From positions 62,001 to 126,000 of IMG/VR virus record IMGVR_UViG_3300013005_000001: a stretch of 64,000 nt of DNA; one strand, written 5' to 3'. Below the pieces are notes generated by a model. It had not been told where the DNA came from. It saw nothing but the letters and a program-made list of their open reading frames with translations, and ran no database searches. Shown in pieces: positions 9,518 through 24,472 of this stretch. Within the stretch, counting starts at the first letter, position 1. Each line of letters starts with the position of its first letter. Made by a program: the position numbers and the translations under genes.

Positions 9518-10129
9518 CTATGTCTCTTCCTGTACATAACAATAGTAAGGGGGACCAGTGTGAGGATCAAATTTTGCAGAAACGGCAATAGCTTTAAGAC
9601 ACAGGCTTTTAGCTTGAGGGATGTTAGGAATGCCCTTTTTAGGAAACAGTATAGACATAGCCCCCAAAGCATAAGAAGCGCCTGTACCGAGCGCATAGAG
9701 GCCACTCACGTCAGATGTCCAGGAGTAATCACCATCTACAACATAGATGGAGCCATTTATTGAACAAATCACCGTAGACCCTTGCTCAGCTATATGGCTT
9801 GATTCATCTCTTTCTGGTGCAGCATAACCTTGAACTTCAAATGTAGCTCTTAGAGATGGTATGAACTTACTAGTAAAAAACTGGTCCAACTTAGAATCTG
9901 TTATGCCCGGTGGTGGTATTGGTGGTTGAAAAACATGATGCAGGATATTTATAGCCCTAACATCTCCAGCAGCACCTAAAAGATATCTACCATTAATAGC
10001 AACTTTAGAAGAATTTTTACCTAAAGTAGTTATTTGAGAAGCGAAACCGCCATCGTCCATAGAGGATATTCTAGAATCTGCACAAATGATACTGAAACCG
10101 TCACCTTGAACTCCAATTATTGTAGTCAT
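9518..10129 (-). CDS. proteasome beta-subunit/HslV-like Ntn threonine protease
   Basis: N-terminal (M)TTIIG nucleophile, ADSR, SSKV, GAAGDV, ALGTG, DPHTG. Confidence 0.85.
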   Translation of the reverse strand: MTTIIGVQGDGFSIICADSRISSMDDGGFASQITTLGKNSSKVAINGRYLLGAAGDVRAINILHHVFQPPIPPPGITDSKLDQFFTSKFIPSLRATFEVQGYAAPERDESSHIAEQGSTVICSINGSIYVVDGDYSWTSDVSGLYALGTGASYALGAMSILFPKKGIPNIPQAKSLCLKAIAVSAKFDPHTGPPYYCYVQEET

Positions 10130-10327
10130 ATAAATCCTTGTTTATAAATACGGGCAAAAGGATTATACTACATATCTTGAACAAAAACAATTTAAATAGA
10201 GTCTTGTTTAGGATTATAATATAAAGAACCAAATACTTTTAAAGCTATTTCTTTAATTTGCCTAGGATCTTTAGTCTGATAGGAATAGTATTTTTGCTGT
10301 TTTTGATAAGTTTTACTTTTGTTTTTT

Positions 10328-10579
10328 CTACGTTTGGACAACTGTAACACCCTCTTTGTACAGGCACAGAGAAGGGTAAGTATCTCTTATGTCTGTATTG
10401 AAAAATTTACCAGAAGAAGAAGAAGTTATAAAGTTCTGATAAATAGTTTCAGGAATTTGGCGATAAAGCCAAACTGCTCTTGATCGAAAAATAACGATAA
10501 GATCTTTTGTCTCAGTATTCCAAGAAGCAGCGTGTAAAACGCTACTATCTTTAAAGTTGTGTAGTCTAAATGTCTCCAT
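10328..10579 (-). CDS. KTSC-domain protein
   Basis: SSVL...WN..TKDLIVIF....Y..IP...Y..F..SSS.GKFFN..IRD.Y. Confidence 0.85.
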   Translation of the reverse strand: METFRLHNFKDSSVLHAASWNTETKDLIVIFRSRAVWLYRQIPETIYQNFITSSSSGKFFNTDIRDTYPSLCLYKEGVTVVQT

Positions 10580-10604
10580 AATACTTTCCGTATAATATGT
10601 GTAG

Positions 10605-10676
10605 CGCCTCCACTAGGAATCGAACCTAGAACGGGGGATTAGAAGTCCCATGTTATATCCATTTAACTACAGAGGC
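10605..10676 (-). tRNA. tRNA-Arg(TCT)
   Basis: GCCTCTG acceptor, CT-TCT-AA loop, GGTTCGATTCC T arm. Confidence 0.9.
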
Positions 10677-10696
10677 ATTAGACAATTATATCACCG

Positions 10697-11122
10697 CTAC
10701 GGGTATCCATAATTGCTATGAGTGTTAGAGTCTATAAATAGTTTAACTTGAAGAATAGTTTTGTCTTCTCTAACAACATAAACAAATCCATTAGTCCAAC
10801 ATGAACCTTCAACAATATAACCAGGGTCAGGGTCAGTAGGATCTACTAGGCCACATTTTAAATTGTCTAATAACTTAAATCTAAAAGAATTTAATGGAAC
10901 TGCACTCCAATATGAATCATTAAGAATATCTTCAGGAAAAGGAATCTTTCCATGAAAGTTCATAAAATTATTTGCTAAAGAAACAACAAGTTCATGAGAT
11001 AGTTCCTTAGAGTCGTATACTAACCATTCTTTATAGAACTGGTAAAATATTAAAAACTCATAAGAATCTTCTTCAAAAAAAGAAGAATCTAAAGACTGCA
11101 GTGCTTCTATAGAAATAGCCAT
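10697..11122 (-). CDS. hypothetical protein
   Basis: ORF track. Confidence 0.6.
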   Translation of the reverse strand: MAISIEALQSLDSSFFEEDSYEFLIFYQFYKEWLVYDSKELSHELVVSLANNFMNFHGKIPFPEDILNDSYWSAVPLNSFRFKLLDNLKCGLVDPTDPDPGYIVEGSCWTNGFVYVVREDKTILQVKLFIDSNTHSNYGYP

Positions 11123-11123
11123 A

Positions 11124-11504
11124 TTATTTATTTTTCAATAACAACTTAACATAAAGGGTTCTTCTTTCAATATTAGAAAGAAACTTTACGGCTGTCATTC
11201 TCCAGTTGTTTTGTTTATTAACATAATCTAAAACTTCAGATTCTGAATATTGTGAATTGTTTTTTCTTAGATTGTTTTTGTGCATTTCAACTTTAGTTTT
11301 TTGGCACGATAATTGAAGTTCAATTTCTCTTCTAACCAATTGAAGGCTGTAGTGCCAAAGTTCAAGGTGAGAGTGAAGATAAGATTTAACTTCATCAGAA
11401 GTTTCAGGAGATTTAATGTCGCTGGCAACGACCTCTTGAAACTTGGACATCTCTTTGTCTGATATAGAATCTATAGTTCTATCATTCAGGTATATGAGCT
11501 CCAT
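11124..11504 (-). CDS. hypothetical helical protein
   Basis: ORF track. Confidence 0.6.
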   Translation of the reverse strand: MELIYLNDRTIDSISDKEMSKFQEVVASDIKSPETSDEVKSYLHSHLELWHYSLQLVRREIELQLSCQKTKVEMHKNNLRKNNSQYSESEVLDYVNKQNNWRMTAVKFLSNIERRTLYVKLLLKNK

Positions 11505-12240
11505 TTTTGTTGCCTTTCTTATATATAAATTGGTACACTTGTAAGATATCTTCCTTAAAGGAAGCTTGAGCAGATTCTCCAGATTTTAAAACATAATTTA
11601 GAGAATACAATGGGTAAATTGGCCAACTACCTAGCCAATTAAGTTTTTGTTTATAATCTTTCATTTTGACATCAGTGCCAAAAAGATTAGATAAAACAGT
11701 ATTTCCTATTGGACATATAATTTTAGGATTCATAATATGAATCTCATTATGAAGATATGGCAAACAGTTGTCTATATACTTTTGATCTACTTCTCTAGTA
11801 GGGCATCTTAACAGATATGTTAAACAAGCTTTATCGGAAGAAAAGCCTACTTCTTTTAAAGAAGATATAAAGAAATCAGAAGAAGCCTGATCTAAATAAG
11901 AAGTTTCAAAAATAAATAAAACGTCAGGGTTATTAACATTCCATTTTGGTAGAACTGGAGTAGAAGAGAATTGACACTTCCTACAATTGTGAGTAACCGT
12001 ATGCAGGTCTGTAATCTTTAAAGAATTTTTTAAAGAATTAGAAGAAACTCTTGCCTCTTTGATAATGTCAGCAACATCTGCATTTGGCAATTTTTTATCA
12101 ATTGCCGAGAATATATTAGAAACTATATCTGTCTCCATAAAGCCGAGTTGACCATAAGATCTTTCGACTGATGGAGATTCAGATAAAGCTTCGTTTATAA
12201 TTTCTTCTACTAAGGAAGCGTCAAATGAATTAGAACTCAT
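11482..12240 (-). CDS. family-4 uracil-DNA glycosylase-like protein with degenerate catalytic motifs
   Basis: CRKC, LRCP, CLPYL..EI...PKII.PIG; start reassigned to the ATG at 12240. Confidence 0.75.
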   Translation of the reverse strand: MSSNSFDASLVEEIINEALSESPSVERSYGQLGFMETDIVSNIFSAIDKKLPNADVADIIKEARVSSNSLKNSLKITDLHTVTHNCRKCQFSSTPVLPKWNVNNPDVLFIFETSYLDQASSDFFISSLKEVGFSSDKACLTYLLRCPTREVDQKYIDNCLPYLHNEIHIMNPKIICPIGNTVLSNLFGTDVKMKDYKQKLNWLGSWPIYPLYSLNYVLKSGESAQASFKEDILQVYQFIYKKGNKNGAHIPE

Positions 12241-12682
12241 CCGGAACAGAGTTAGCAGAACCACCCTGTTTAGCTTGACTGCTTGTAGCGGTTGCAGTGT
12301 CAGACTTCTGGAAAGAAGAACCAACATAAGTTAAAGCTTCTGCAACAATAACAATCTTTGAACGAGCTGAACCTTCTTGCTGCCAACGCTCTTGAACTAA
12401 GCGTCCAACAAGCTGAACTTGTGAACCCTTTTTCATTTTGCCTTCGCTAAGTTGTTTAGAAACAAATGAAGCATTCTTAGTTGCAAAATCTGTTCCATCT
12501 TTAAGATAGTATGTAACATCAAAGTATCCTGAGGTTACGCCTGCACCTTTTTCGCTGCCTGCAAAATCAACGGCAATTCTGAACTTAGCGATATTGCCAT
12601 TAGCAATTACTTCAGGGTCAGACACAATGCCTGCGGTTAATATTACGTTGTTACGTGGATCTATCATTTCTATTGTCTCCAA
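12230..12682 (-). CDS. ssb: single-stranded DNA-binding protein
   Basis: OB-fold pattern FRIAVD...YFDV...KGSQVQLVGRL.QERW; acidic PDEF tail. Confidence 0.85.
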   Translation of the reverse strand: METIEMIDPRNNVILTAGIVSDPEVIANGNIAKFRIAVDFAGSEKGAGVTSGYFDVTYYLKDGTDFATKNASFVSKQLSEGKMKKGSQVQLVGRLVQERWQQEGSARSKIVIVAEALTYVGSSFQKSDTATATSSQAKQGGSANSVPDEF

Positions 12683-12931
12683 TTATTCTTTGTTTAATGT
12701 ATCTTTAAATGTATTAGATATTTGATCTAAAAATCCAGTAGAAATCTTAACAGCTTCTACTGAACCATATTCTACCATAAGGTAGTTCAAAAGATTAAGA
12801 TATAAATTATATATTCCCATCTTAAGATCTGTAACCACATCAGTGGTAGTGCCTTCGGGAATATCCTCAAGGAGTTTAAACCCTTCGGCATATTCTTGTT
12901 CTTGCTGGTCTTTATTATCTTCTGTTGACAT
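12683..12931 (-). CDS. hypothetical acidic protein
   Basis: ORF track. Confidence 0.6.
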   Translation of the reverse strand: MSTEDNKDQQEQEYAEGFKLLEDIPEGTTTDVVTDLKMGIYNLYLNLLNYLMVEYGSVEAVKISTGFLDQISNTFKDTLNKE

Positions 12932-13229
12932 TAGTAGTCACCCTATTCGATAAAGCTTCGTCAATTATCTGACCAAGATATTTAGTATCTTTGTAACCTT
13001 TGTCATACAAAACAGATATAATTGGCTTTGGATCAACGTGATTATAAGTTACCAGTTGAAGATTTAAAACATCGTTTATAGTATAAATTCTATAATTATT
13101 TAAATCTCTTCTAGGATTGGGATACTTCTTGTTTTTTTCTCGGTTAGCAATAGTCAATGTGGAAACATTGAGAATTTTAGCTACTTCAGATCTATTAAAA
13201 GAAGGCTGAGATGATTTGTTTTTACTCAT
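12915..13229 (-). CDS. MerR-type helix-turn-helix DNA-binding protein
   Basis: SEVAKILNVSTLTI..RE...Y..PRRD.NNYRIYT..DV. Confidence 0.85.
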   Translation of the reverse strand: MSKNKSSQPSFNRSEVAKILNVSTLTIANREKNKKYPNPRRDLNNYRIYTINDVLNLQLVTYNHVDPKPIISVLYDKGYKDTKYLGQIIDEALSNRVTTNVNRR

Positions 13230-13284
13230 TTAAATTACCTTTTCAAGTTTAGATTATATATAATAGCAAAAAGGTATATAAAAG

Positions 13285-14523
13285 TCAAGACGTAACAAGA
13301 GAATTTTGAAGAATATTAGAAAACATTCTTTTGCATTGAACATAAGAATTTGGTTTTACATTTATTCTATTGGTTTTTAAAAACTTAACAGAAGCTTCTA
13401 AGGCTTTTAGTAGAGTTCGGTCTTCTAAAGAAAGACGCTTAGAAACAAAGGTTAAATAAGCTTGTGATTCGTGAATTTCATGAACATAACTACAGTTATC
13501 TGGGCAATAGTCATTGTGATCTTCGTCTTCGGTATGGTCTTCATGAATTACAATATCAAAGTTATTGCAAAAATCATTAATTAAATGTTCTCTAACATTC
13601 ATTAAATGTTGGTAATAAAAATCTGTATCAGTAAAAGGATTCCAAGTTAATGAAGAAACTTCAGAAAGAGGAATTTCTTCCCAACATTTAAAAAAGGGAA
13701 CATGCCATTGAATAGGAAGATTAGAAGGAAGGTTTTGCAAGGGATGATTTTGCAACCATGTTAAATTTGCTTTAGTTTCTGGTTTTAAATATTTTTCGAA
13801 TTGTTCATACTTGTTAGTATGCAAGAAGAAAGATATACCCTCGGTAATGTCAAAGTTAAAACCACTGTTCCAAATCCAATCGTAAGCAGAAGCCATAACT
13901 CCAGAAAGATCTTTAGGATATTTTTCAATATCTTCCATACTACTAAAGAAAGGTCTGCACAATGTGCCGTTAGAATAAAAGTTATACAATGGTGGAGAAT
14001 ATATAGTTTGATCTAATGAAGACAAAGAATTAGATGCAAAAAACATTTTAACAGAAACTAGTCTCATATCTTCTGGATTGTACATAGCAATATATACCTG
14101 CCAAGGAATAGGTAGGTAGTATTCAGATGTGCCAGTTTGAGTACTTATTTGATCTCTGTAATCGTTGTATGCTGAAACAACTTTATAAGTTGGAGGGCGT
14201 TCAAACAATATAATTCCAGGAGACAAATGTCTTACACCGGGAAATAAAAGAGATTCATCTTCATCAACAGAACGTGAAGCAGTAGCTAAATTAAGTTGTT
14301 CTATTGCATTTTCAGCAAAAGATATATTTTGAAATTCAGTATCAATAATAGGAGAAGTGGTTATTTTTTTAGAAGAAATTCCTGATTCATTAGATACTTT
14401 TAATAAGTAATCACAAACAGCATAAGAAGCGTATCGATCAGGAAAAGCTAAAATATTATAATTAAGCTCAATGTAAGAAGAAGAATAATCTTCATTAAAT
14501 ATAAAATCAGCAGGAGTTAACAT
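13285..14523 (-). CDS. prokaryotic E2 family D-like protein (paralog 3)
   Basis: LPIPWQVYI...KMFF...YSPPLYNFYSNGTLC with putative catalytic Cys. Confidence 0.7.
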   Translation of the reverse strand: MLTPADFIFNEDYSSSYIELNYNILAFPDRYASYAVCDYLLKVSNESGISSKKITTSPIIDTEFQNISFAENAIEQLNLATASRSVDEDESLLFPGVRHLSPGIILFERPPTYKVVSAYNDYRDQISTQTGTSEYYLPIPWQVYIAMYNPEDMRLVSVKMFFASNSLSSLDQTIYSPPLYNFYSNGTLCRPFFSSMEDIEKYPKDLSGVMASAYDWIWNSGFNFDITEGISFFLHTNKYEQFEKYLKPETKANLTWLQNHPLQNLPSNLPIQWHVPFFKCWEEIPLSEVSSLTWNPFTDTDFYYQHLMNVREHLINDFCNNFDIVIHEDHTEDEDHNDYCPDNCSYVHEIHESQAYLTFVSKRLSLEDRTLLKALEASVKFLKTNRINVKPNSYVQCKRMFSNILQNSLVTS

Positions 14524-14526
14524 AAT

Positions 14527-15708
14527 TTAAACAATCTCCGATTGTTGGATATAGGAAGCAACTTCATCATGTTGAAATTCACTAAAGAAATCTTTATTAG
14601 GATCTTCATAATTAAGAAGTACAGACTTATATATAGAAGAAATAATATATGGATTAGAAATATAATTAGCAATAGAAGAAGGTTGATAATTTTTAACTAC
14701 TACTCTATAATTTGTTTCTAAAGAACAAGAAGGATAATGAGAATACACTGCAGATAAAACTTTTGCTATTTTAGCCCAAGGAGTTACTGCATTTGAATAA
14801 GTTTGAGGTATTAAGGAAGAAGAAGAAGAATTAGAATTAGACTTTTTTAAATGGTGTTTTAAAGTTGGATAATGAGAAGTGTTTTGTTTAGTATAAGTAA
14901 TATAACCAATATGTTCTTCTAAAGAAGTATTGGACAAAAGAAACAATAAGCTTTTAAAATACTTTGCTGTGTTGTATCTATAGCCCATATTAGCAAGAAT
15001 AGCAGCATTTTTTTTAGAAGAAGCAGATATTCTATCAATTATAGGAGCAAAGTATTCTTGATTAAACATATGAGGAGATAAATCACAATTCCATCCACCA
15101 AAATAAGAATTAAAAATATGATTATAAACGTCGGTAATAGAAGAACCGTTTTGAATAAGTTGAGTAGCTATAAGAGAATCTTGACCCATGCAAATATTTC
15201 CACCACTAGAATTTGGAAGGTAGCAAGGAACCAACACATCATCAAGAGACTGAAGAGGCTTATCATTAAAATATAAATGAAAACCAAAAGTGCTGCTAAA
15301 TGAATGAGATTGATAATTGGTAGATATAACAGAAACTGTCCATGGAATCCAAATTTTCACAGATTGTAAAAACTTAGGAGAAATTCTAGGACGATAAGAA
15401 GTTGAGGTAGAAAAGTCTACTTCTATTTCAAATGGAGGACGTTCTATGACGTGCATTTTTCCATCTGGAGATGAGTACCTAACAGCTAGGGGAAGCAAGG
15501 AATAATCTGTAGTAGAAGTAGTTTCATAATGTTGATTTATAAGTTTGTAAGTATCTAAAAAGTTAACGTGATAGTTAATCCAAAGATCGTTTTCAACTAC
15601 TCTAGGAGTTGCTTGGTGAGTAAGATTAAAAATATTTTCAGGGATATATAATGAATAATTATAGTCGTAAAAATCAATAGAGTTCATGGCATTATTCCTT
15701 AGAAACAA
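14527..15708 (-). CDS. prokaryotic E2 family D-like protein (paralog 2)
   Basis: IWIPWTV...LYF...LVPCYLPNSSGGNICMG. Confidence 0.7.
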   Translation of the reverse strand: MFLRNNAMNSIDFYDYNYSLYIPENIFNLTHQATPRVVENDLWINYHVNFLDTYKLINQHYETTSTTDYSLLPLAVRYSSPDGKMHVIERPPFEIEVDFSTSTSYRPRISPKFLQSVKIWIPWTVSVISTNYQSHSFSSTFGFHLYFNDKPLQSLDDVLVPCYLPNSSGGNICMGQDSLIATQLIQNGSSITDVYNHIFNSYFGGWNCDLSPHMFNQEYFAPIIDRISASSKKNAAILANMGYRYNTAKYFKSLLFLLSNTSLEEHIGYITYTKQNTSHYPTLKHHLKKSNSNSSSSSLIPQTYSNAVTPWAKIAKVLSAVYSHYPSCSLETNYRVVVKNYQPSSIANYISNPYIISSIYKSVLLNYEDPNKDFFSEFQHDEVASYIQQSEIV

Positions 15709-16938: not shown

Positions 16939-17216
16939 TAAGTCTCCGTAAGTATAGATTCAAAAGATAAGGTATTATTTTGTAATGAATCAAGAAGTGG
17001 CAAAGATGACAAATGCAACGAATGTATTTCGTCATGCACTTGTTTTGCAATTGGATATATTTTGTGTAAAAAATAAAAATTGTTTAATATATTAAAGTTT
17101 TCAGATTCTACAAATAAAACAGAAACGTTATTGATCGGTTCCGTCAGATAACTTTTCGTCAGCCAGGCTCTCAATGGCTGAGGCAACTCCTGGACTTTCT
17201 GCAGCCAATAGACCAC
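16938..17216 (-). CDS. hypothetical protein, start uncertain
   Basis: Fills the gap in the operon; no clear RBS. Confidence 0.3.
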   Translation of the reverse strand: MVYWLQKVQELPQPLRAWLTKSYLTEPINNVSVLFVESENFNILNNFYFLHKIYPIAKQVHDEIHSLHLSSLPLLDSLQNNTLSFESILTET

Positions 17217-17517
17217 CGGCTCCTTCTTTCATGGCTTCAAGCATTTGTTTTCTGCTTTGAGCTATAGTGTCCATAAATATTTTTTGAGATTCAGGAGAAG
17301 CAAATTTAATTTGGGCTATAAGGCCTTCCATATTAACTGCTTGCTCACCAAAACCAAGAATTAAAGTAGCAATCTGCTTTTCTAAGTTCTCGATAGACTC
17401 ATCAAATTCTTTAAATCTTTCATCTATTTTAGCAGACATAGATATAATAAGTTGCTGAGTTTGTTCTCTAAGCAAATCTATATCGTTTATTCCTTCAAAT
17501 AATGAATCATCTGACAT
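17128..17517 (-). CDS. hypothetical coiled-coil protein
   Basis: ORF track, translational coupling. Confidence 0.65.
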   Translation of the reverse strand: MSDDSLFEGINDIDLLREQTQQLIISMSAKIDERFKEFDESIENLEKQIATLILGFGEQAVNMEGLIAQIKFASPESQKIFMDTIAQSRKQMLEAMKEGAGGLLAAESPGVASAIESLADEKLSDGTDQ

Positions 17518-18134
17518 TACGCATCATACCATTCTGTGTTGTTGGTAACGTGAGAAACCAAAGAAAGATCTAGTAAATAAGAAATACTTACAACATCTTG
17601 ACGAGTTACTTTAATAGAGTCAACAGATAAAGGTGATTTCATATCAGGTATGAATGCACCACTGTCAGACTTGCGAGCTTTAAAATGACCGGCTTTCCAG
17701 ATGAATGCAGAAGTATCTACATTGTCACCTGATTGCCAATACTGGCATTTAAAGATTCTACTAATTGATTGACCAGCAGCAGTCATTGTTCCACCGTAAG
17801 AAACATATGCTTCAGGTGTAGCAAGGCCAAGTCGCTCATTGGCAGGAAAGTTAAGAGCAGCAGTTCCATTAGTTATTGCTTTAAGATAGGCTGCAAAGTC
17901 AATGGCATCAACAAAACAATTAGTGTTACTTTCAAGTTTTCCAGAAGCATTGGTCTTGCCAATGTCAATGGAGAATTTCATACCTTGAAACCAAGGTCGA
18001 ATAGAAACAAAACCACTTTGAGATTTAGATTTAAACCACTTTTTATAAAGTGTGTTAGTGTATTTTGGTTTATCATCTTGGTTATCAGAATCTAGTGATT
18101 CTAAAAACTCTTCTACATTTTCTTCAATTGACAT
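17517..18134 (-). CDS. hypothetical beta-rich protein directly downstream of the AAA ATPase
   Basis: GAGG RBS, 205 aa. Confidence 0.7.
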   Translation of the reverse strand: MSIEENVEEFLESLDSDNQDDKPKYTNTLYKKWFKSKSQSGFVSIRPWFQGMKFSIDIGKTNASGKLESNTNCFVDAIDFAAYLKAITNGTAALNFPANERLGLATPEAYVSYGGTMTAAGQSISRIFKCQYWQSGDNVDTSAFIWKAGHFKARKSDSGAFIPDMKSPLSVDSIKVTRQDVVSISYLLDLSLVSHVTNNTEWYDA

Positions 18135-18156
18135 AATTACCTCTTGTTTAAGATTG

Positions 18157-19755
18157 TTAAACTTTCAAGTCCCATGAAGGGGCTTGAGAAGATTTTTGTT
18201 TACCAAGTATATCATCTATATCATTGTACTGGAAGCTAGAAGCCCAGTCCCAGTTTTCATAAGCATAGCGATATAAGTCTTTAATCATTTCGCGTTCTTT
18301 ATTCCAAAGAATATTGCGCATAAATGGAGCAGCTTTTACTACGTCAGCAGTATTTAGCATGCGGTGTTCAGCAGAAACAACATTAAATTTTGTTTCTTTA
18401 ACAAGTGATTTAATTTCTGCACCAGTAAAATACTTAGTTGCATGAGCTATAGCAGAATAATCATACGTATCTTCAGGAAGATAAATCTTAATAATTTCAA
18501 TTCGTTCTTCAAATGATGGCAAGCCAACAAAGAAGATCTTATCGAATCGTTCTGCACGAAGCATTTCTGGCTTAAGATGATTAAGCTGGTTAGCAGCACA
18601 CATTAAGAATACGTCATTAGGAAGTTCTTGAAGACCAGTAAGAAATTCGCCATGAACACGATCGGTAGTGCCACCGTCTACTTGAGATGAGCTTTGACCA
18701 CCAGACATGTCTCGACCGAACTCGTCAATCCAAACACAAAGAGGAGCCATGACTTTAATCTGTTGAAAGACTGTACGCATGTTTTGTTCTGATTGACCAA
18801 TGAAGGAATTCATTACTTGACTTACACCAGTTCGAGCAAGATCAAGACCAAGTGCACTAGCAGTTGCTTCACAAATAGCAGATTTACCAGTGCCCGGAAT
18901 ACCAACAGTTAGCATGCGACGAATAGGCTGAATGCCAAACTTCTGAGCTTCTTGAGGATTATTCCAAAAATAAAGATTGCGCATAATAACATCTTTAATA
19001 TTATCAAGGCCACCAATTTGATCAAAAGTAATCTTAGGTTTGATTATTTCAAGAATTCCATTTTTCTTAACATTAGCCATTTTAGCTTCGTAAATATAAG
19101 AAGAGCTAATTGTCCCATGCTCAAGAACTGACATAAGACAGAGGTTGATGAACTTAGATTCTGTAAGGCCAAGTCCAGCATTAGAAATTTCTTTAGCCTT
19201 AGCAGCATCTAACACTTCGCCATTAGTTGAAGTGTGTATGTGATTAAGAATTTCGTTTAGTTCTTGAAGAGTAGGGTACATATCTTCATGAACATAAAAT
19301 AGATGAGCAATTTCCTCTGGAACATCAGATGCGCTCAACACTATTAGCTGAAGTGGCATCAGAGAAATGTCATCAGATTTAAAAGATTTTCTGTAGTCAG
19401 AATGAAGAGAAGAAACTAAACCTGAGAATTCGTTAGCAAATGCTTTGGGGTCTCCAATTAAATTGTAAATAAAAGACTTAGGAAGATCTTTAACATCAGG
19501 AGAATTAAACATGTAATCAAATGATAATGAAAGATCTGTAGTTGTTTTCACCATGGGTGGAGCGCCTTCTTCAGGCGCAGGTATAGAAACAAGAACTGGT
19601 TTCCACTGAAAGTTTACGTTTTGAGAAAATCCATCTTTTGAAATCGTAAAATAAGTACGCTTATCAAAAGATATAATGTTTTCTTCAAGTCTGTAGGGGT
19701 CGGTTGTTTTAATCCATATGGCAGGAATGCCAAGTTGAATTTGCTGAAAGAGCAT
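18157..19755 (-). CDS. AAA+ ATPase (Ycf46/Cdc48-like, with degenerate N-terminal AAA module)
   Basis: Walker A GIPGTGKS, Walker B CVWIDE, sensor-1 AAN, Arg finger LRAERFD; GGAG RBS before ATG 19755. Confidence 0.9.
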   Translation of the reverse strand: MLFQQIQLGIPAIWIKTTDPYRLEENIISFDKRTYFTISKDGFSQNVNFQWKPVLVSIPAPEEGAPPMVKTTTDLSLSFDYMFNSPDVKDLPKSFIYNLIGDPKAFANEFSGLVSSLHSDYRKSFKSDDISLMPLQLIVLSASDVPEEIAHLFYVHEDMYPTLQELNEILNHIHTSTNGEVLDAAKAKEISNAGLGLTESKFINLCLMSVLEHGTISSSYIYEAKMANVKKNGILEIIKPKITFDQIGGLDNIKDVIMRNLYFWNNPQEAQKFGIQPIRRMLTVGIPGTGKSAICEATASALGLDLARTGVSQVMNSFIGQSEQNMRTVFQQIKVMAPLCVWIDEFGRDMSGGQSSSQVDGGTTDRVHGEFLTGLQELPNDVFLMCAANQLNHLKPEMLRAERFDKIFFVGLPSFEERIEIIKIYLPEDTYDYSAIAHATKYFTGAEIKSLVKETKFNVVSAEHRMLNTADVVKAAPFMRNILWNKEREMIKDLYRYAYENWDWASSFQYNDIDDILGKQKSSQAPSWDLKV

Positions 19756-19795
19756 GTGTACTCCGAATATCAAAATAATAATCTAAGGGCTTTAT

Positions 19796-19865
19796 AAAAA
19801 ATGATGGGGGGGACCACTCTATTAAGAGTTTAATAAACTATCAAGTAGTTTAATAGCCCCCCCCA
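19796..19865 (-). terminator. branched G7/C8-closed hairpin plus U tract between the Ubl and AAA genes
   Basis: G run 19806-19812 pairs with C run 19857-19864, two internal hairpins, followed by a T5 tract on the minus strand. Confidence 0.55.
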
Positions 19866-19885
19866 CGATCATAGTAGGAAAGGTA

Positions 19886-20137
19886 TTAGCCCTTTTCGCC
19901 TGCACGGCGATGGAACTCAACGTTGTCGTTTGGCTGAATGACATAGTTCTCGTCGAGCTTGTCTTTACCCTTGTAAGCAATAGCGTCTGAGCTAATGCCC
20001 CAGAGCTTGCTGAACTGCTCACGAACTTGTCCAACAGTCTTTCCTGAGACTGGTGCTGGCTGATTGTATACACCGTAACGAACGTTGGCTACGCCTTCGC
20101 TTGAGCTGGTGCTTGTTTGGTTGGAATTCATTTCCAT
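19886..20137 (-). CDS. ubiquitin-like (beta-grasp) modifier protein
   Basis: 83 aa, GKTVGQVR...AY.G...DENYVIQPND.VEF, C-terminal RRAGEKG, adjacent to E1. Confidence 0.85.
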   Translation of the reverse strand: MEMNSNQTSTSSSEGVANVRYGVYNQPAPVSGKTVGQVREQFSKLWGISSDAIAYKGKDKLDENYVIQPNDNVEFHRRAGEKG

Positions 20138-20158
20138 GTTATTATCTCCGTTTATTAG

Positions 20159-20908
20159 TTATAGGTAAGCGGGTTGCTGTTGATTAACCATACGATTGTA
20201 TGGCTGGGACATGCCAAGACCTAAATCAAAGTAGATCTCTGACTGTTCTGGATTTTGTTCGGAAACAATAGTATATTGAATACGACCAAGAATCATTGCA
20301 GCAACAGCCATGTTGGTGGCAAGTATTTGTGTACCACCTTCTACTTCGGCTCGTTCTTGACAAGACATTTCACCTGGATTGCGATCAGGTGGATTTTGGT
20401 ATTCTGGGTGTGTTTCTACCGGATGAGCAGTAACGTCTACGCCATCGCGACGACGATAATGATAGATGCTACCAAAAAGGTTATCATCATTTCCACCAGT
20501 AAAAACATCTACGTTGTTAAGCTTTGAAGCTGCGTCAAATAAAATTTTACGAGCAGCAAAGTTGTCAACAACAGCAAGAACAATATCGCCTTCAGTAATT
20601 AACTGAGTAGCTCTGATCTTGCTAGATTCTTCATCTGTTTCAGGATGTTCATCTGAAACAACCCACTTAGGAATAGGTATAACAAGAGTCTGATTAAACT
20701 GCTTAGTTAGCTCAAGAGCTTTAACTGAAGCCTTGTTTCCTACTTGAGTAAATGATTGACGCTCTAAGTTTCTTTGCTCATAACTGTCACCATCAACAAT
20801 TATTAAAGCAGATCCAGGATATTTCCATTCAAGAAGTCTTACGACTCCTTCTGCTAACCAGGTGCCAATGCCACCGGCACCAACTAGAACTACTCTTTTG
20901 GGGTCCAT
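20159..20908 (-). CDS. ThiF/E1-like Ubl-activating enzyme
   Basis: VGAGGIG, VDGD..E.RNL.RQ, VDNFAAR, PGEMSC putative catalytic Cys. Confidence 0.9.
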   Translation of the reverse strand: MDPKRVVLVGAGGIGTWLAEGVVRLLEWKYPGSALIIVDGDSYEQRNLERQSFTQVGNKASVKALELTKQFNQTLVIPIPKWVVSDEHPETDEESSKIRATQLITEGDIVLAVVDNFAARKILFDAASKLNNVDVFTGGNDDNLFGSIYHYRRRDGVDVTAHPVETHPEYQNPPDRNPGEMSCQERAEVEGGTQILATNMAVAAMILGRIQYTIVSEQNPEQSEIYFDLGLGMSQPYNRMVNQQQPAYL

Positions 20909-20918
20909 AAATTATTCC

Positions 20919-22571
20919 TTAATCGTAATAAGCCAAGCTATTAGTATGCTCATAAGCAACATAATCTTGACATTGAGTAATAGGGTTTTCAATTTTTCTT
21001 TTACTTATAGCAAAATCAAGAATTGAAGTTAAATAAGGTTTGCAATTGCGAGAATAATAAAATTCACAATCAACGCAACTTGACTGATTATCATACACGT
21101 TGTATGGATGAGTGTGATCAAATTCAATTACATCATCATAATATACAGTCTTCTCACAGGTGCATTGTTCAATTAAAGATAAAGGAATGTCACAGCAAAC
21201 TGTTCTAGTCTGATCAAATCCTTCATAGAAATAATCATCAAGAACTTCTACAGTTGTTCCTTCGTTACTAGAAAGTAATGAAGTATGCAAAGAACTGTCA
21301 TCATCGTTATAATCAACTTCTTTAATTCGCATAAGCAAATCTTGATCTTTGCCATCTTTAGTCCAAAGGTAATAAGTTACATTAGGATCTAAATTTCTGT
21401 CAGTTAAATACTTTTTAGCGTTATCGATTATCTCAGCATAAGAATCTGATATAAGAGCAAAGCACAAATCGCAAGTGTCACAATAGAAATTCTTTGCGTA
21501 ATAAGCAAGTACTTCAGTTTGACATGATGGGCATTCAGATCCAGCAGAATCTACTTCACCTATAACGAGATATGGTTCATCGTCTTTTGGATCTGGATAC
21601 TCTTGAAGTCGAGGATCTCCGTTACGAATACCAGGATGAGTAGAGGCCTGCGGAAGACTCTGTGCCTGCGTTGTAGCCTGCGTTGTAGACGCCTGCGCCA
21701 CCCGAGTAACCGAACCCCCCGCTATAGGGGGGAGTGCTTTTTTTACTTTAGAAGTCCATTCTACTACTTGAGGATCGGGTTCTTTAAGAAAAATATAATC
21801 TTCAAATACATCTTCTGGCTTAAGGGTATAAGTATGACCGGCCATTTGCATTTCAATATGATATTGAGTTGCGCCATTATTGACAGATTTTTGCCATCCA
21901 TAAGTAATATGGATACCATCAAAATCAGCTTGGTCTGCATGATCTGTGCCAGATGCATATGCAGCCATATCGGGATGGCTATGAACAGAACCAACAATTA
22001 AAACATCTTCTGGTTTTTGATCTACGATACTGTCCGCATCGTACTTACAGTGAACAGAAGTGTTTACTTGGTCTGGAACAAGAACGCCCCAGCCTTGAGA
22101 AGTGCCTTCATACTGAGGATCAAATGTCAAAAGAACAATTGACTCAGTGCCGTGCTGAGCATGAACCAATCTAAAGAACTCGTCTAGCTTGTCAATAATA
22201 ACACGAGGAATGGCAGGAAGACTGTATTCAGCTGTTTCACGAGTAACGTCAAAGTCAAAGAGGTCTTCGTCAACTATTTCAGAAACAGTTCTTCCAACAA
22301 AGTTGTTAACAACCTTAACAATCTTAGTAGAAAGATCAGTTACGTAAGAAACATTCTTAGTTGTAATGCCCTTATCGTAAACGTTTGTTTCAACTTTGCG
22401 GTCAGTAGCAACATTGCAAATTAGATAATAAATATTGAAACCAAGAAATTCAATTTCTTCTTCAATGTTATCTCTGTTTGCCATAAAGCATGGGACTCCG
22501 GATTTAGTCCAGAAGTAATTTAAGTCTTCTAACTTAACATCCATATAAGTAATATTATCTATTTGGTCCAT
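20919..22571 (-). CDS. JAB/MPN+ (JAMM) isopeptidase with C-terminal Cys-rich zinc-binding regions
   Basis: TESIVLL...GSVHSHPDMAAYASGTD (E-HxH-x7-S-x2-D); CPSC/CDTC and further Cys clusters. Confidence 0.88.
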   Translation of the reverse strand: MDQIDNITYMDVKLEDLNYFWTKSGVPCFMANRDNIEEEIEFLGFNIYYLICNVATDRKVETNVYDKGITTKNVSYVTDLSTKIVKVVNNFVGRTVSEIVDEDLFDFDVTRETAEYSLPAIPRVIIDKLDEFFRLVHAQHGTESIVLLTFDPQYEGTSQGWGVLVPDQVNTSVHCKYDADSIVDQKPEDVLIVGSVHSHPDMAAYASGTDHADQADFDGIHITYGWQKSVNNGATQYHIEMQMAGHTYTLKPEDVFEDYIFLKEPDPQVVEWTSKVKKALPPIAGGSVTRVAQASTTQATTQAQSLPQASTHPGIRNGDPRLQEYPDPKDDEPYLVIGEVDSAGSECPSCQTEVLAYYAKNFYCDTCDLCFALISDSYAEIIDNAKKYLTDRNLDPNVTYYLWTKDGKDQDLLMRIKEVDYNDDDSSLHTSLLSSNEGTTVEVLDDYFYEGFDQTRTVCCDIPLSLIEQCTCEKTVYYDDVIEFDHTHPYNVYDNQSSCVDCEFYYSRNCKPYLTSILDFAISKRKIENPITQCQDYVAYEHTNSLAYYD

Positions 22572-22603
22572 AAAATCTCCAGATTTAGGGTTTCTTTATT
22601 TTG

Positions 22604-24472
22604 TTAAAAAGGGTCAGTGAAAGATTGATTGTTAGCTTGTAAAAAGTTTTGATGTTTTTTAATTCCAACAGATTTGGATAAAGTGTGTACAGATTGCTGA
22701 ATAGCAACTTGAACATACTGTTCTTGGAATGGCTGATAATAAGCTACCATTTCTCCTTCAGGAGATTCTGTAACATTACCAAGGCATTCTGCACAACACT
22801 GAGTTACAGTAAGAGAAGTGTCTTCAGGTAAAATAGTGGGAGTACAAGGTCCAAATTGAGAATTATTATTCTTCAACAATCCGCAAGGGCAAGTAAAATG
22901 CTGAGCATTGCATGATTGACAAAGGGTAATAACTTTAGGAGCTAAGATTAAATCAGGTGAAACAACCATGGCCTTAGACTGAGGATAACTTTCTTGCCAA
23001 CCATTAGTTTCAATAGCAACAGCTGCACATACATAACAGTTAGTAGGAGTTAATTCATTATCTGCTATATAACCAGGTTGGCAGTTAGAACATACCACTT
23101 CTTCAGATTCAGGAATGTGTAGAAGTTGTTTAGCTAAAGCAGTTTTTGCATTTTCAGAATTTCCTATAACGCCTATCCAACTTGAGCAAATATGGCATTC
23201 TGCTACAGTATCATGTTGGGTATGATAGTATTCACAGTCTGATTCAGAAAAAACTATATTAGGATCTTCGTTATTATAGTATTTATCAACAGACTCAATA
23301 AAAGAGTAATGATCATTTATGCATGAGTTGCATACATCATTGCCGTAAGCATCGCAAATTGGTTCTTCATCGCTCATATGATGAATGTCTTCACAGCATG
23401 AGCAAACCCAATCGTTTTCATTATCTTCGTCTTGAGAAAATAAGTTTGGCTGGATTAAAACTGCAGAACCGTTTTTCTCTCTGTTAGCAACAGTAAAATC
23501 ATAAGGGTTATCTTTAGCAGTATGAGTATAATTTACTGGAGAAGAAGCAAAAGCTTTTTTAAACATATCAGCAATGTTTAGATCGGTAAAAGATAAATCA
23601 GGACGAGATACAATATTATACATCTTAGGAATGTTAGTATCAGAATAGTATGCTTGGTAGTTACCTAACATAGCCATAGCAAGAGTTAGCTCTTGTCCGT
23701 TGTAATCATGTTGAGCTTGATTATCCATGTCTTTAACTTTAACAGGGATCCAAAGGTTTTCATCTAGAGTCCAATTAAAACCTTCTTCATCAGACTTTTG
23801 CTGCCAAAGCTTTGGATTTGTAATATATTCAGGCTTTCCGTTAGCAGCATAAAAACGAGGACCATCAGTCTCTGACATGTTGGCATCATTATAAGTCTCT
23901 ACTCCTGAGCAGCGCTCAATGAAACGAGAAACTTTTTCATTAAAAGGAAAAGAAGACCAATCATCTTTATGATACAAGCAAATCCAACCTACGGCATTGC
24001 CTCGATAGCCTTTGCAGTTAATGTTAGGAAGGTTAACGTGATAAAGAACGTTATTAGGAGAAGTGATTGGATATGGAGAATAAAACATTTTAGCACCTAG
24101 AAGGTTGCCGTTTTCAAAGTCTCCAATAACAATGCGATAGGGCTGAGCTACATAGTAAGTTTTAGCGTGTATATCGCCCTCGTGAGAGCCCCAGTTGAGG
24201 TGATACATGCCGGGGGCGTGTTGGGTCACAACTTGGGTATGAGGACCCGCAGAACGGATTGCAAGCACTCCTGTGCCATTCAAGGGAAGTAAGCCTGTAT
24301 CAAAGGATGCAAACTGAGAAAAGTTACTGTAAAAAGATACGATATCTTTATCAGTTACATGGTCTAAGTTAAAAGATTTAACAGAAGACCGGACGGCATA
24401 AGTGCCTTGATCGTTTTTAACGAGAGAGTAGTTATATGAGTCAGTCATTGTATTTTCCATTCGCAATGTCAT
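22604..24472 (-). CDS. prokaryotic E2 family D-like protein (paralog 1) with C-terminal CxxC repeats
   Basis: YVAQPYRIVIG...KMFYSPYP...LYHVNLPNIN...GWICL; roughly ten CxxC-type pairs after residue 350. Confidence 0.75.
   Translation of the reverse strand: MTLRMENTMTDSYNYSLVKNDQGTYAVRSSVKSFNLDHVTDKDIVSFYSNFSQFASFDTGLLPLNGTGVLAIRSAGPHTQVVTQHAPGMYHLNWGSHEGDIHAKTYYVAQPYRIVIGDFENGNLLGAKMFYSPYPITSPNNVLYHVNLPNINCKGYRGNAVGWICLYHKDDWSSFPFNEKVSRFIERCSGVETYNDANMSETDGPRFYAANGKPEYITNPKLWQQKSDEEGFNWTLDENLWIPVKVKDMDNQAQHDYNGQELTLAMAMLGNYQAYYSDTNIPKMYNIVSRPDLSFTDLNIADMFKKAFASSPVNYTHTAKDNPYDFTVANREKNGSAVLIQPNLFSQDEDNENDWVCSCCEDIHHMSDEEPICDAYGNDVCNSCINDHYSFIESVDKYYNNEDPNIVFSESDCEYYHTQHDTVAECHICSSWIGVIGNSENAKTALAKQLLHIPESEEVVCSNCQPGYIADNELTPTNCYVCAAVAIETNGWQESYPQSKAMVVSPDLILAPKVITLCQSCNAQHFTCPCGLLKNNNSQFGPCTPTILPEDTSLTVTQCCAECLGNVTESPEGEMVAYYQPFQEQYVQVAIQQSVHTLSKSVGIKKHQNFLQANNQSFTDPF

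What the first reader, a model, noticed from the sequence alone, without database searches (positions are those of the whole stretch)
9518..24472. Apparently complete phage-encoded ubiquitin-tagging plus proteasome-like degradation pathway
Seen: one co-directional minus-strand block encodes E2_D-like (22604-24472), JAB (20919-22571), E1/ThiF (20159-20908), Ubl ending RAGEKG (19886-20137), a AAA+ ATPase (18157-19755), two more E2_D-like proteins (13285-15708) and a Thr-nucleophile proteasome-beta/HslV-like protease (9518-10129). Catalytic residues look intact in all of them. Known: Ubl-E1-E2-JAB gene sets occur in prokaryotic PRTRC-type mobile elements and anti-phage systems (Bil, type II CBASS Cap2/Cap3), generally without their own unfoldase and protease. 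Inference: this virus may tag host or viral proteins (for example defence factors) with its Ubl, then unfold and degrade them with its own machine, in parallel to the actinobacterial Pup-proteasome. I cannot confirm novelty without a literature and database search.
Basis: partly seen in the sequence, partly recalled or inferred. Interest (0 to 1): 0.95.

Follow-up and report, generated by a model that had tools for sequence, protein, structure and literature searches.

The report
Jumbo-phage ubiquitin-like tagging gene cassette
A widespread group of ~200-kb freshwater phages carries its own divergent ubiquitin-like tagging kit (activating enzyme, three conjugating-enzyme-like proteins, a trimming peptidase and a small tag), but the nearby unfoldase and proteasome-like protease are not inherited with it elsewhere, so a complete 'tag-and-destroy' pathway is not supported.

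Summary
All eight ORFs are at the stated coordinates. JAB (intact JAMM site), ThiF-type E1, a Cdc48-like AAA+ and a Thr-nucleophile proteasome homolog (closest to BPH, not HslV) are confirmed. The 83-aa 'Ubl' always ends in ...GEKG, but its fold was not verified. The three 'E2_D-like' proteins form one family with invariant E-x-PP, PW, N-x7-8-C and N-x-D. Sequence profiles link it to Pfam Prok-E2_D / PRTRC protein B through bridging phage proteins. Two AlphaFold models match no solved UBC structure.

The core (E2-like+Zn ribbons, JAB, E1, Ubl; 19886-24472) is a very divergent, phage-borne relative of the PRTRC cassette. It is collinear in 49 loci of one jumbo-phage clade. An E2-like/JAB/E1 triad recurs in Bacillus jumbo phage WH1 and on a faecal phage scaffold.

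A conserved hairpin terminator separates the Ubl from the AAA+. WH1 has the triad but no AAA+ of this family and no HslV-like gene in its whole genome. The protease occurs at 62-67% identity in at least 35 unrelated phage loci without the cassette.

Verdict: a new variant of a known kind. The tagging part is supported; coupling to the unfoldase is possible but unproven; coupling to the protease is unlikely.

The parts
22604..24472 (-). p622. The N-terminal ~335 aa is an E2-like (Prok-E2_D-related) domain with invariant HVNLPN150, C153 and GWIC165. The C-terminal half is an array of CxxC zinc-ribbon-like modules. It is the first gene of the core cassette.
   Evidence: ORF. Family alignments A4/A7 with invariant Cys pairs. 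hhalign to the E2-like family 91%, E 1e-6. Weak FYVE/zinc-ribbon hits. AF2 pLDDT 79 with no PDB match. The p412 model matches a 621-aa p622-type phage protein in BFVD.
20919..22571 (-). JAB/JAMM metallopeptidase (residues ~129-250), with an N-terminal domain of its own and a Cys-rich C-terminal region. Predicted to process the Ubl and to remove it from targets.
   Evidence: Pfam Prok-JAB 2.7e-6. Weak PRTRC_A match. Invariant E143, H197, H199, S207, D210 and Cys pairs. JAMM motif in 45 of 48 loci.
20159..20908 (-). Minimal ThiF/MoeB-type E1 (249 aa) with GAGGIGT, R50, D115 and the candidate catalytic Cys183 (EMSCQER).
   Evidence: ThiF 1.5e-13. PRTRC_ThiF is the best NCBIfam match at 1.1e-10 over residues 4-236. 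Invariant residues. 655 relatives in the metagenomic protein collection.
19886..20137 (-). 83-aa putative ubiquitin-like modifier ending ...FHRRAGEKG. It has a low-complexity N-terminal ~18 residues followed by a conserved ~65-aa core.
   Evidence: Alignment A3 has an invariant C-terminal G83; one lineage carries two extra residues after it. GEKG end in 47 of 48 loci. No domain match. The fold was not tested.
19794..19866 (-). G8...C7 hairpin followed by a T-run, immediately after the Ubl stop codon. It looks like an intrinsic terminator closing the p622-JAB-E1-Ubl unit.
   Evidence: -31.7 kcal/mol, z -3.46. A hairpin is present in 10 of 11 related loci, with inner stems that differ in sequence but still pair.
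18157..19755 (-). Classical-clade AAA+ ATPase (Cdc48/VAT-D2-like, one ATPase domain) behind a clade-specific ~235-aa N-terminal region. Walker A GIPGTGKS, Walker B VWIDEF, pore loop SFIG. Its link to the Ubl system is possible but unproven.
   Evidence: AAA 1.1e-22, AAA_lid_3. PAN/CDC48/FtsH models ~1e-30. Cdc48 5e-53. phrog_8638 6e-67. Relatives in Corndog, Rhodobacter and Agrobacterium phages. No HbYX-type C-terminus.
17517..18134 (-). p205: a well-conserved protein of unknown function directly after the AAA+ (41-98% identity across the clade).
   Evidence: No relatives or family outside the clade.
14527..15708 (-). p393: an E2-like paralog (probable start ATG at 15687) with ERPP, PWT, LPN...ICMG and WNxD motifs and a fast-diverging C-terminal half.
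   Evidence: Alignment A2. Paralogy to p412 at 98.4%, E 7.5e-15. Merged core A6.
13285..14523 (-). p412: an E2-like paralog with invariant E108, P110, P111, P140, W141, N181, C189, N223 and D225.
   Evidence: Alignment A1. Prok-E2_D hits for 6 of 11 members and 12 of 75 wider members. 1,566 clusters in the exhaustive search. AF2 core pLDDT ~85 with no PDB match. BFVD matches to the p393-, p622- and WH1-gp214-type proteins.
9518..10129 (-). Thr-nucleophile proteasome homolog (BPH/AAH-like, 'HslV family'). It lies 8 kb from the AAA+, beyond the SSB, UDG, HTH and KTSC genes and a tRNA-Arg. Most likely an independent, horizontally mobile phage gene.
   Evidence: phrog_1040 5.5e-18. Pfam Proteasome below cut-off. 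BPH 5ovs E 0.015 over residues 6-201. 178 relatives in viral contigs, most without the cassette. Actinomycetia phage DSL-LC01 46% identity.

Best explanation
The core feature is a phage-borne, highly divergent PRTRC-type ubiquitin-like conjugation and deconjugation cassette (p622 E2-like+Zn ribbons, JAB, E1, Ubl; 19886-24472). Two further E2-like paralogs lie 4-6 kb downstream (13285-15708).

Proposed mechanism, all chemical steps inferred:
1. The E1 adenylates the Ubl at its terminal Gly83 and takes it as a thioester, probably on Cys183.
2. The Ubl passes to the invariant Cys of an E2-like protein (C189 in p412, the equivalent Cys in p393, C153 or C165 in p622).
3. The E2-like proteins choose targets directly and transfer the Ubl to lysines of host or phage proteins. 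Their variable C-terminal halves and the zinc-ribbon array of p622 evolve much faster than the E1 and the Ubl, which fits a specificity role.
4. The JAMM peptidase trims Ubl precursors and reverses conjugation.

The block sits among replication and repair genes, so it probably acts during host takeover, possibly against defence proteins.

The AAA+ downstream is a separate transcription unit. It is a Cdc48-like unfoldase that may or may not act on conjugates. The BPH/AAH-like protease is an independently mobile phage gene and not a dedicated partner.

Shown here: gene content, conservation, intact motifs, homology to PRTRC components and phyletic patterns. Inferred: the chemistry, the targets and the timing.
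For: Relationship to PRTRC: the E1 is closest to PRTRC_ThiF and the JAB to PRTRC_A.

Bridging cassettes: the faecal phage scaffold has JAB (PRTRC_A 1e-12), E1 (PRTRC_ThiF 2e-28) and a true Prok-E2_D / PRTRC_B protein (3e-11 and 1e-9). Bacillus phage WH1 gp214-gp215-gp216 match the clade's E2-core, JAB and E1 HMMs (8e-9, 4e-9, 2e-16) in the same order.

Homology chain: family to gp214 to Prok-E2_D.

Active-site-like signature: N-x7-8-C...N-x-D is invariant in 22 core sequences and kept in 146 of 150 distant hits.

One family: the three paralogs group together by profiles and by predicted structure.

Ubl: the C-terminal Gly is invariant, and one lineage has a 2-residue extension.

Conservation: catalytic motifs are kept across 48 loci.

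Rates of divergence: E1 52-98% and Ubl 43-95% identity, against 26-69% for p393 and p412.

Terminator after the Ubl.

Independence of the protease and the AAA+.

Precedent: a PRTRC protein B on a Phocaeicola prophage is a hotspot of recurrent sequence variation (bioRxiv 10.64898/2026.10.01.756045), which fits a target-recognition role for the E2-like component.
Against: - No window protein reaches the curated cut-off of any PRTRC or Prok-E2 model.
- The Ubl matches no ubiquitin-like, ThiS or PRTRC_C model, and its fold was not tested.
- Two AF2 models of the E2-like proteins match no UBC/RWD structure in the PDB.
- No ParB-like gene was seen among the block ORFs that I scanned.
- PRTRC itself has no experimentally known function, so the mechanism rests on analogy with Bil, CBASS Cap2/Cap3 and eukaryotic cascades.
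- Within the clade the AAA+ always follows the Ubl, so a functional tie cannot be excluded.
Confidence: 0.58

Rival explanations
1. Partial coupling. Ubl conjugates made by the cassette are recognised by the N-terminal region of the Cdc48-like AAA+, which extracts or unfolds the tagged proteins (a 'segregase'), without any dedicated protease or using host proteases.
For: The AAA+ is the next gene after the Ubl in all clade loci. It is a classical-clade unfoldase with an intact pore loop and is closest to Cdc48/VAT. It has a clade-specific ~235-aa N-domain that could bind the Ubl (other phage relatives align only from residue ~130). Terminators are often leaky.
Against: A conserved hairpin and T-run lie between the genes. 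Three ORFs are inserted there in L128. The WH1 triad lacks this AAA+. The AAA+ family is common in phages that gave no E1 hit. The whole region is collinear, so adjacency carries little information.
Confidence: 0.17
2. One reading: Ubl tagging, then unfolding by the AAA+, then degradation by the HslV-like ring, as a viral analogue of ubiquitin-proteasome or Pup-proteasome systems.
For: All components are intact and conserved in every clade genome where both ends could be seen. The best NCBIfam model for the AAA+ is proteasome-activating nucleotidase. The host is probably actinobacterial, a lineage that has a Pup-proteasome system (own knowledge).
Against: The protease is 8 kb away, behind replication genes and a tRNA. 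Its family occurs at equal identity in unrelated phages without the cassette or an AAA+. It is BPH/AAH-like, with no known unfoldase partner (PMC8665760). The AAA+ has no HbYX-type tail and is not HslU-like. WH1 lacks both genes.
Confidence: 0.07
3. A sulfur-carrier system rather than protein tagging. The E1 activates the small protein as a ThiS/MoaD-type thiocarboxylate donor for a phage nucleotide, tRNA or DNA modification, and the JAB matures the carrier.
For: The E1 is a minimal ThiF/MoeB-type enzyme. The carrier ends in a single Gly. The block sits among DNA-metabolism genes. The Ubl has no detectable similarity to conjugated Ubls.
Against: No rhodanese, cysteine desulfurase or sulfurtransferase was found in the block ORFs I scanned. 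The triad with a Cys-bearing E2-like protein and a JAB recurs in three phage lineages. The best matches are PRTRC models, not ThiF or MoeB equivalogs.
Confidence: 0.08

Closest known systems
PRTRC system (ParB-related, ThiF-related cassette; NCBIfam TIGR03735-03737; appears to correspond to operon class 6d of Iyer, Burroughs & Aravind 2006, PMC1779556)
   Same: The same component set: a small Ubl, a JAB with an extra N-terminal domain, a minimal ThiF-type E1 and a Prok-E2_D-type Cys protein, carried on mobile elements. The best NCBIfam matches of the E1 and the JAB are PRTRC_ThiF and PRTRC_A. Bridging phage cassettes match PRTRC_A, PRTRC_B and PRTRC_ThiF.
   Different: All scores are far below the curated cut-offs. 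No ParB and no PRTRC_C match was seen. There are three E2-like paralogs, each 390-620 aa with large extensions and zinc ribbons. The conserved His after the Cys that the paper describes for class 6d is absent. The carrier is a lytic-looking ~200-kb phage rather than a plasmid or ICE.
Bil (types I and II) and type II CBASS Cap2/Cap3 bacterial Ubl-conjugation defence systems
   Same: The same E1 + E2 + JAB (+ Ubl) logic. These are the prokaryotic cases in which conjugation has been shown experimentally (PMC10097602, PMC11601603).
   Different: Those systems are bacterial and act against phages. PADLOC gives only weak E1-E2 hits for this E1 and nothing for the other proteins. Here the system is encoded by the phage.
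Phage-encoded proteasome homologs PPH and AAH, and bacterial BPH (Fuchs, Alva & Lupas 2021, PMC8665760)
   Same: The 203-aa Thr-nucleophile protein is of this kind. It is phage-borne, patchily distributed, closest to BPH and has relatives in actinophages.
   Different: None of note: it behaves like an ordinary member. That paper found no co-occurring AAA+ partner, and my survey agrees.
Archaeal SAMP/Urm1-Cdc48/PAN-proteasome and actinobacterial Pup-Mpa-proteasome pathways
   Same: A small C-terminally activated tag, a classical-clade AAA+ unfoldase and an Ntn-Thr protease are all encoded in one genome.
   Different: There is no evidence that the three are coupled here. There is no HbYX tail, no alpha-ring subunit and no match to the Pup ligase route. 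The protease is inherited independently of the tag.
E2-like/JAB/E1 triad of Bacillus jumbo phage vB_BceM_WH1 (gp214-gp216) and faecal phage scaffold MT835919
   Same: Homologous E2-like, JAB and E1 genes, in the same order in WH1.
   Different: Short (231-241 aa) single E2-like proteins. No recognisable Ubl, no AAA+ of this family and no HslV-like gene. gp214 and gp215 are deposited as 'hypothetical protein'.

Membership tests
PRTRC system | ThiF-family E1 scoring above the TIGR03736 cut-off (144.75 bits) | tested here: not met
   It is the best NCBIfam match and aligns over the full length, but scores only 41.3 bits, E 1.1e-10.
PRTRC system | JAB protein = PRTRC_A (TIGR03735, cut-off 101.8 bits) | tested here: not met
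   17.3 bits, E 0.0027. Pfam Prok-JAB is met at 27.7 bits against a cut-off of 25.
PRTRC system | E2-like protein = PRTRC_B / Pfam Prok-E2_D above cut-off | tested here: not met
   p412 scores 13.4 bits against 25, and p393 and p622 give no hit. Distant homology is supported indirectly: 12 of 75 family members hit Prok-E2_D, and the chain through WH1 gp214 reaches a true Prok-E2_D at 43.8 bits.
PRTRC system | Ubl = PRTRC protein C / Prok_Ub | tested here: not met
   The 83-aa protein gets no Pfam or NCBIfam hit at E <= 0.1.
PRTRC system | ParB-related gene in the cassette | tested here: not met
   None of the 18 block ORFs scanned against Pfam gave a ParB match. Not every small ORF in the window was scanned.
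PRTRC system | Absolutely conserved His C-terminal to the catalytic Cys of the E2-like protein (PMC1779556, table row 6d) | tested here: not met
   The invariant set of the merged p412/p393 core is E, PP, PW, N, C, N, D, with no His.
UBC/E2 superfamily | Catalytic Cys preceded by a conserved Asn about 8 residues upstream (HPN-like) | tested here: met
   N181-x7-C189 in p412 and LPN-x6-7-C in p393, invariant in 22 sequences and kept in 146 of 150 distant hits. The comparison with the canonical HPN-to-Cys spacing is from my own knowledge.
UBC/E2 superfamily | UBC (alpha/beta) fold | tested here: inconclusive
   AF2 models of p412 (core pLDDT ~85) and of the p622 N-domain (pLDDT 79) gave no PDB match with E < 0.05 and no UBC/RWD hit. 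The predicted order of elements (helix, beta-meander, Cys loop, helices) is compatible with a UBC fold but is not proof.
UBC/E2 superfamily | Forms a Ubl thioester | not testable with these tools
   Needs biochemistry.
Ubiquitin-like (beta-grasp) modifiers | Exposed C-terminal Gly, encoded next to an E1 | tested here: met
   G83 is invariant...GEKG is present in 47 of 48 loci, and the gene directly follows the E1.
Ubiquitin-like (beta-grasp) modifiers | Beta-grasp fold | not tested
The profile search against PDB sequences gave only insignificant hits, and none of the 120 listed relatives (of 253 found) carries a precomputed Pfam domain.
JAMM/MPN+ metallopeptidases | E...H-x-H-x7-S-x2-D zinc site | tested here: met
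   E143, H197, H199, S207 and D210 are invariant. The motif is present in 45 of 48 loci.
Classical-clade AAA+ unfoldases (Cdc48/PAN/FtsH) | Walker A and B, aromatic-hydrophobic-Gly pore loop, AAA lid | tested here: met
Proteasome-activating AAA+ (PAN, Mpa, Rpt) | C-terminal HbYX-type docking motif (penultimate Tyr) | tested here: not met
   The C-termini are ...SWDLKV...SWSIKA...KSKGNW and so on, with no penultimate Tyr in any of 8 lineages.
HslV / proteasome beta Ntn hydrolases | N-terminal Thr nucleophile and family profile match | tested here: met
   The protein starts M-T-T-I-I-G, a start motif found in 78 of 80 loci. phrog_1040 5.5e-18. Pfam Proteasome scores only 16.3 bits against 22.4. 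The closest solved structure is BPH.
HslUV protease | Cognate HslU-type (Clp/Hsp100-clade) ATPase partner | tested here: not met
   The only AAA+ in the block is classical-clade (Cdc48-like) and not HslU. No AAA+ lies near the protease in unrelated phages.
Bil / type II CBASS (anti-phage Ubl systems) | Match to PADLOC models of the system proteins | tested here: not met
   The E1 gives only weak E1-E2 model hits (3e-6), and the E2-like proteins, the JAB and the Ubl give nothing.

The most novel reading that the evidence does not exclude
A globally abundant clade of ~200-kb freshwater (probably actinobacterial) phages runs its own ubiquitin-like cascade. Three fast-evolving E2-like specificity factors tag host proteins, a Cdc48-like unfoldase then processes them, and a phage proteasome homolog degrades them. 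This would be the first virus-encoded tag, unfold and degrade pathway in the prokaryotic world.
Probability: 0.08. Interest if true: 0.92.

Novelty: new variant of a known kind. Interest (0 to 1): 0.58.

Why it matters
The experimentally studied prokaryotic Ubl-conjugation systems (Bil, CBASS Cap2/Cap3) belong to bacteria and act against phages. Here a full candidate set sits on the phage side. It is conserved in hundreds of environmental genomes, and the putative specificity component is triplicated and evolves fast. If it is active, it would show that phages also use Ubl tagging, for host takeover or counter-defence. It would also give the uncharacterised PRTRC-type cassette a tractable biological setting.

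The work defines a large, unannotated E2-like family (1,566 clusters at 50% identity). It also re-annotates gp214 and gp215 of cultured Bacillus jumbo phages, which offer a laboratory entry point.

Separating the unfoldase and the protease from the cassette matters too, because it stops an attractive but unsupported 'viral proteasome pathway' claim from spreading.

Tried and rejected
- Megablast of the block against deposited phages: no match.
- PDB sequence searches with the p412, p622, Ubl and JAB profiles: nothing significant.
- Foldseek against the PDB for both E2-like models: no UBC or any other fold.
- p205 as a conserved partner of the AAA+: it has no similarity to the gene after the AAA+ in Agrobacterium phage JP1 and no relatives elsewhere.
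- Deep search with the E1 profile and with the Ubl profile: only in-clade proteins came back, so no distant contexts were obtained.
- Pattern scan with the AAA+ alignment: it only re-found E1-bearing contigs, so it did not discriminate.
- TTATAAAG(C/G)C box as a general promoter motif: it occurs only once in the window.
- A shared origin for the Cys-rich tails of p622 and the JAB: rejected (hhalign 0.6%).
- IetA/IetS-type pairing of the AAA+ with the S8 subtilase at 32269-33795: considered and set aside, because the genes are 12.5 kb apart and the AAA+ matches many classical AAA models equally well.
- One literature hit for 'PRTRC' was a false match on plasmid names.

Full report
**What the window is**

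The window is AT-rich (about 36% GC in this part). It carries six tRNA genes and a long run of tightly packed minus-strand genes. It is part of IMG/VR contig IMGVR_UViG_3300013005_000001 (210 kb). It has no close DNA relative among deposited phages.

Other genes in the window include an SNF2/ResIII helicase, an S8 subtilase, a PcfJ-domain protein, an epimerase and a WhiB homolog. A related contig has two WhiB genes next to the block. The closest cultured relative of the protease gene is in a freshwater Actinomycetia phage. WhiB regulators are typical of Actinobacteria and their phages (own knowledge), so the host is probably an actinobacterium. One NCBI contig of the clade is labelled Flavobacterium sp.

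**Observation check**

- JAB: it passes Pfam Prok-JAB and keeps the complete JAMM site (E143, H197-x-H199, S207, D210).
- E1: a 249-aa minimal ThiF-type enzyme with GAGGIGT and an invariant Cys183. Its best NCBIfam match, aligned end to end, is the PRTRC ThiF model.
- AAA+: a classical-clade ATPase closest to the D2 domains of Cdc48/p97/VAT (E 5e-53). It has Walker A and B, a pore loop (SFIG) and a lid, behind a ~235-residue N-terminal region of its own.
- Protease: the 203-aa protein starts M-T-T-I-I-G and matches the PHROG 'peptidase HslV family' at 5.5e-18. Among solved structures it is closest to BPH rather than to HslV.
- Ubl: the 83-aa protein has an invariant C-terminus ...FHRR[AS]GEKG. 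In one lineage two residues follow the Gly, as expected for a precursor that is trimmed. It matches no domain model or solved structure, and I could not predict its fold.
- Across 48 related loci the catalytic signatures are kept in 45-48 cases.

**The three E2-like proteins**

Direct profile support is weak: p412 reaches Prok-E2_D at E 0.063, and p393 and p622 give nothing. The following results change that picture.

- p412 and p393 are clear paralogs (hhalign 98.4%, E 7.5e-15).
- With deeper alignments the N-terminal 335 residues of p622 join them (91%, E 1e-6).
- The merged core has nine invariant residues: E-x-PP, PW, N-x7-8-C and N-x-D.
- An exhaustive profile search of 1.84 billion representatives finds 1,566 clusters, 230 of them below 1e-30. 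146 of the best 150 keep the whole signature.
- Scanned one by one, 6 of 11 and then 12 of 75 family members hit Prok-E2_D (best E 1.3e-4). No other family recurs.
- Two bridging proteins close the gap. Bacillus phage WH1 gp214 (241 aa) matches the core HMM at 8e-9. A 231-aa ORF on faecal phage scaffold MT835919 is a bona fide Prok-E2_D (3e-11, 43.8 bits against a cut-off of 25) and matches PRTRC_B at 1e-9. The two bridging proteins match each other at 5e-5.
- The N-to-Cys spacing equals that of canonical HPN...Cys E2 active sites (own knowledge).

Against this, AlphaFold models of p412 (core pLDDT ~85) and of the p622 N-domain (pLDDT 79, pTM 0.75) match no PDB chain, and no UBC or RWD fold. 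The p412 model does match predicted structures of p393-type, p622-type and 241-aa gp214-length phage proteins in BFVD. So the family shares one fold, which Foldseek does not equate with UBC.

I conclude that these are divergent relatives of Prok-E2_D / PRTRC protein B with a conserved Cys-centred site. Their being E2 enzymes is inferred, not shown.

**Closest known system**

The cassette maps onto the PRTRC cassette (JAB = protein A, E2-like = protein B, ThiF-type E1). This appears to correspond to class 6d of Iyer et al. 2006 (PMC1779556). For the window proteins the scores are far below the curated cut-offs. For the WH1 and faecal-scaffold proteins they are intermediate. The phage version is therefore a divergent relative and not a member. 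It has no ParB among the scanned ORFs, no PRTRC_C match, no conserved His after the Cys, three enlarged E2-like paralogs, and zinc-ribbon arrays on p622 and on the JAB that are unrelated to each other.

PRTRC genes on temperate phages are on record. A 2026 preprint reports a PRTRC protein B on a Phocaeicola prophage as a hotspot of recurrent sequence variation (10.64898/2026.10.01.756045). That fits a target-recognition role, and it fits the much faster divergence of p393, p412, p622 and the JAB compared with the E1 and the Ubl in this clade.

I found no paper describing such a cassette in jumbo phages.

**Is the cassette coupled to the AAA+ and the protease?**

Inside the clade it looks so. 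In 49 E1-bearing loci, mostly from contigs that reach 170-270 kb, the whole stretch from p223 to p141 is collinear and the AAA+ follows the Ubl. Collinearity of whole genomes says nothing about function, so I looked outside the clade and at fine structure.

1. The protease family has 178 relatives in viral contigs. Of the 80 fetched, at least 35 have 5 kb or more of upstream flank and none of the block genes, although their protease is 62-67% identical, as close as in-clade copies. A sample of 25 such loci share essentially no other gene with the 64-kb window. In Actinomycetia phage DSL-LC01 the gene sits among small hypothetical genes and a WhiB, with no annotated AAA+ or E1 gene nearby.
2. 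The complete 229,829-bp genome of Bacillus phage WH1 has the E2-like/JAB/E1 triad but no match to the clade's AAA+, HslV-like or Ubl HMMs.
3. AAA+ relatives (26-32% identity, aligning from residue ~130 onward) are common in Mycobacterium, Rhodobacter, Agrobacterium and other phages. The E1 search of the same collection hit only three Bacillus phages and the faecal scaffold.
4. The 130-nt spacer between the Ubl and the AAA+ holds a G8...C7 hairpin (-31.7 kcal/mol, z -3.5) followed by a T-run. A hairpin is present in 10 of 11 lineages, with inner stems that differ in sequence but still pair. In the most divergent locus three ORFs are inserted there.
5. No AAA+ C-terminus has a penultimate Tyr. 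The AAA+ is not HslU-like. The protease belongs to the BPH/AAH group, for which Fuchs et al. found no AAA+ partner (PMC8665760).
6. The protease lies 8 kb from the AAA+, beyond a MerR-like HTH gene, SSB, UDG, KTSC and a tRNA-Arg.

**Conclusion**

The well-supported feature is a phage-borne, PRTRC-type Ubl conjugation and deconjugation cassette with triplicated E2-like components. The E2-like/JAB/E1 core recurs in three phage lineages.

The proposed mechanism is as follows. The E1 adenylates Gly83 of the Ubl and forms a thioester. The Ubl passes to the conserved Cys of the E2-like proteins, whose variable regions select targets. The JAB matures the Ubl and reverses tagging. This mechanism is inferred by analogy with characterised cascades.

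My estimates are about 0.17 that the Cdc48-like AAA+ acts on conjugates, about 0.07 that all three parts form a degradation pathway, and about 0.08 for a sulfur-carrier alternative.

The finding is a new variant of a known kind. It is of real interest for phage-host conflict and for the unexplained PRTRC family, but it is not the 'complete viral ubiquitin-proteasome pathway' first proposed.

Noticed in passing
window 19788-19797 (-): A conserved TTATAAAG(C/G)C box lies right after the post-Ubl hairpin and T-run, about 45 nt upstream of the AAA+ start. It is present in several related loci but occurs only once in the 64-kb window. It could be a promoter or a processing site for the AAA+ unit.
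   Followed up: partly
window 54851-56794 (-); Bacillus phage WH1 gp140 (L167/L168): A PcfJ-domain protein is encoded both in this window and in WH1. So PcfJ co-occurs with the PRTRC-like E2/JAB/E1 triad in two unrelated jumbo phages.
   Followed up: no
window ~29643-29873 (-); L170 1729-2034 and 3673-4008: The window has a WhiB-family regulator homolog, and a clade member has two WhiB genes upstream of the block. This points to an actinobacterial host, whereas the NCBI contig (GCA_049314295.1) is labelled Flavobacterium sp., possibly through a binning error.
   Followed up: partly
L018 6716-7441 and 7501-8883 (LC597490.1 gp214, gp215): Two genes of cultured Bacillus phage vB_BceM_WH1 deposited as 'hypothetical protein' are an E2-like (Prok-E2_D-related) protein and a JAB peptidase, directly upstream of the annotated ThiF. 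This offers a laboratory-tractable version of the triad.
   Followed up: yes
L099 and L122 (IMGVR_UViG_3300042868_009074, 268 kb): One contig carries two diverged copies of the whole block (E1 80% and 70% identical to the window). It is most likely a chimeric assembly of two related phages.
   Followed up: no
L007 5371-7296: The p622 ortholog on this 13.6-kb contig contains two in-frame stop codons. It is either a pseudogene or a sequencing error.
   Followed up: no
window 32269-33795 (-) and 18157-19755 (-): An S8 subtilase is encoded 12.5 kb from the AAA+, and the AAA+ scores well against IetA/IteA anti-phage ATPase models. The pair resembles IetAS, but this is probably coincidence given the distance.
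   Followed up: no
L128 11137-13171: In the most divergent clade member, three ORFs (390, 172 and 85 aa) are inserted between the Ubl and the AAA+.
   Followed up: partly
window 17517-18134 (-): p205, the gene directly after the AAA+, is about as well conserved across the clade as the AAA+ itself, yet it has no detectable relative or domain outside the clade.
   Followed up: partly
window 3363-31452: Six tRNA genes (Gly, Arg, Met, Lys, Asn, Leu) are scattered among the minus-strand genes. tRNA-Arg(TCT) lies inside the block, between p141 and the KTSC gene.
   Followed up: no
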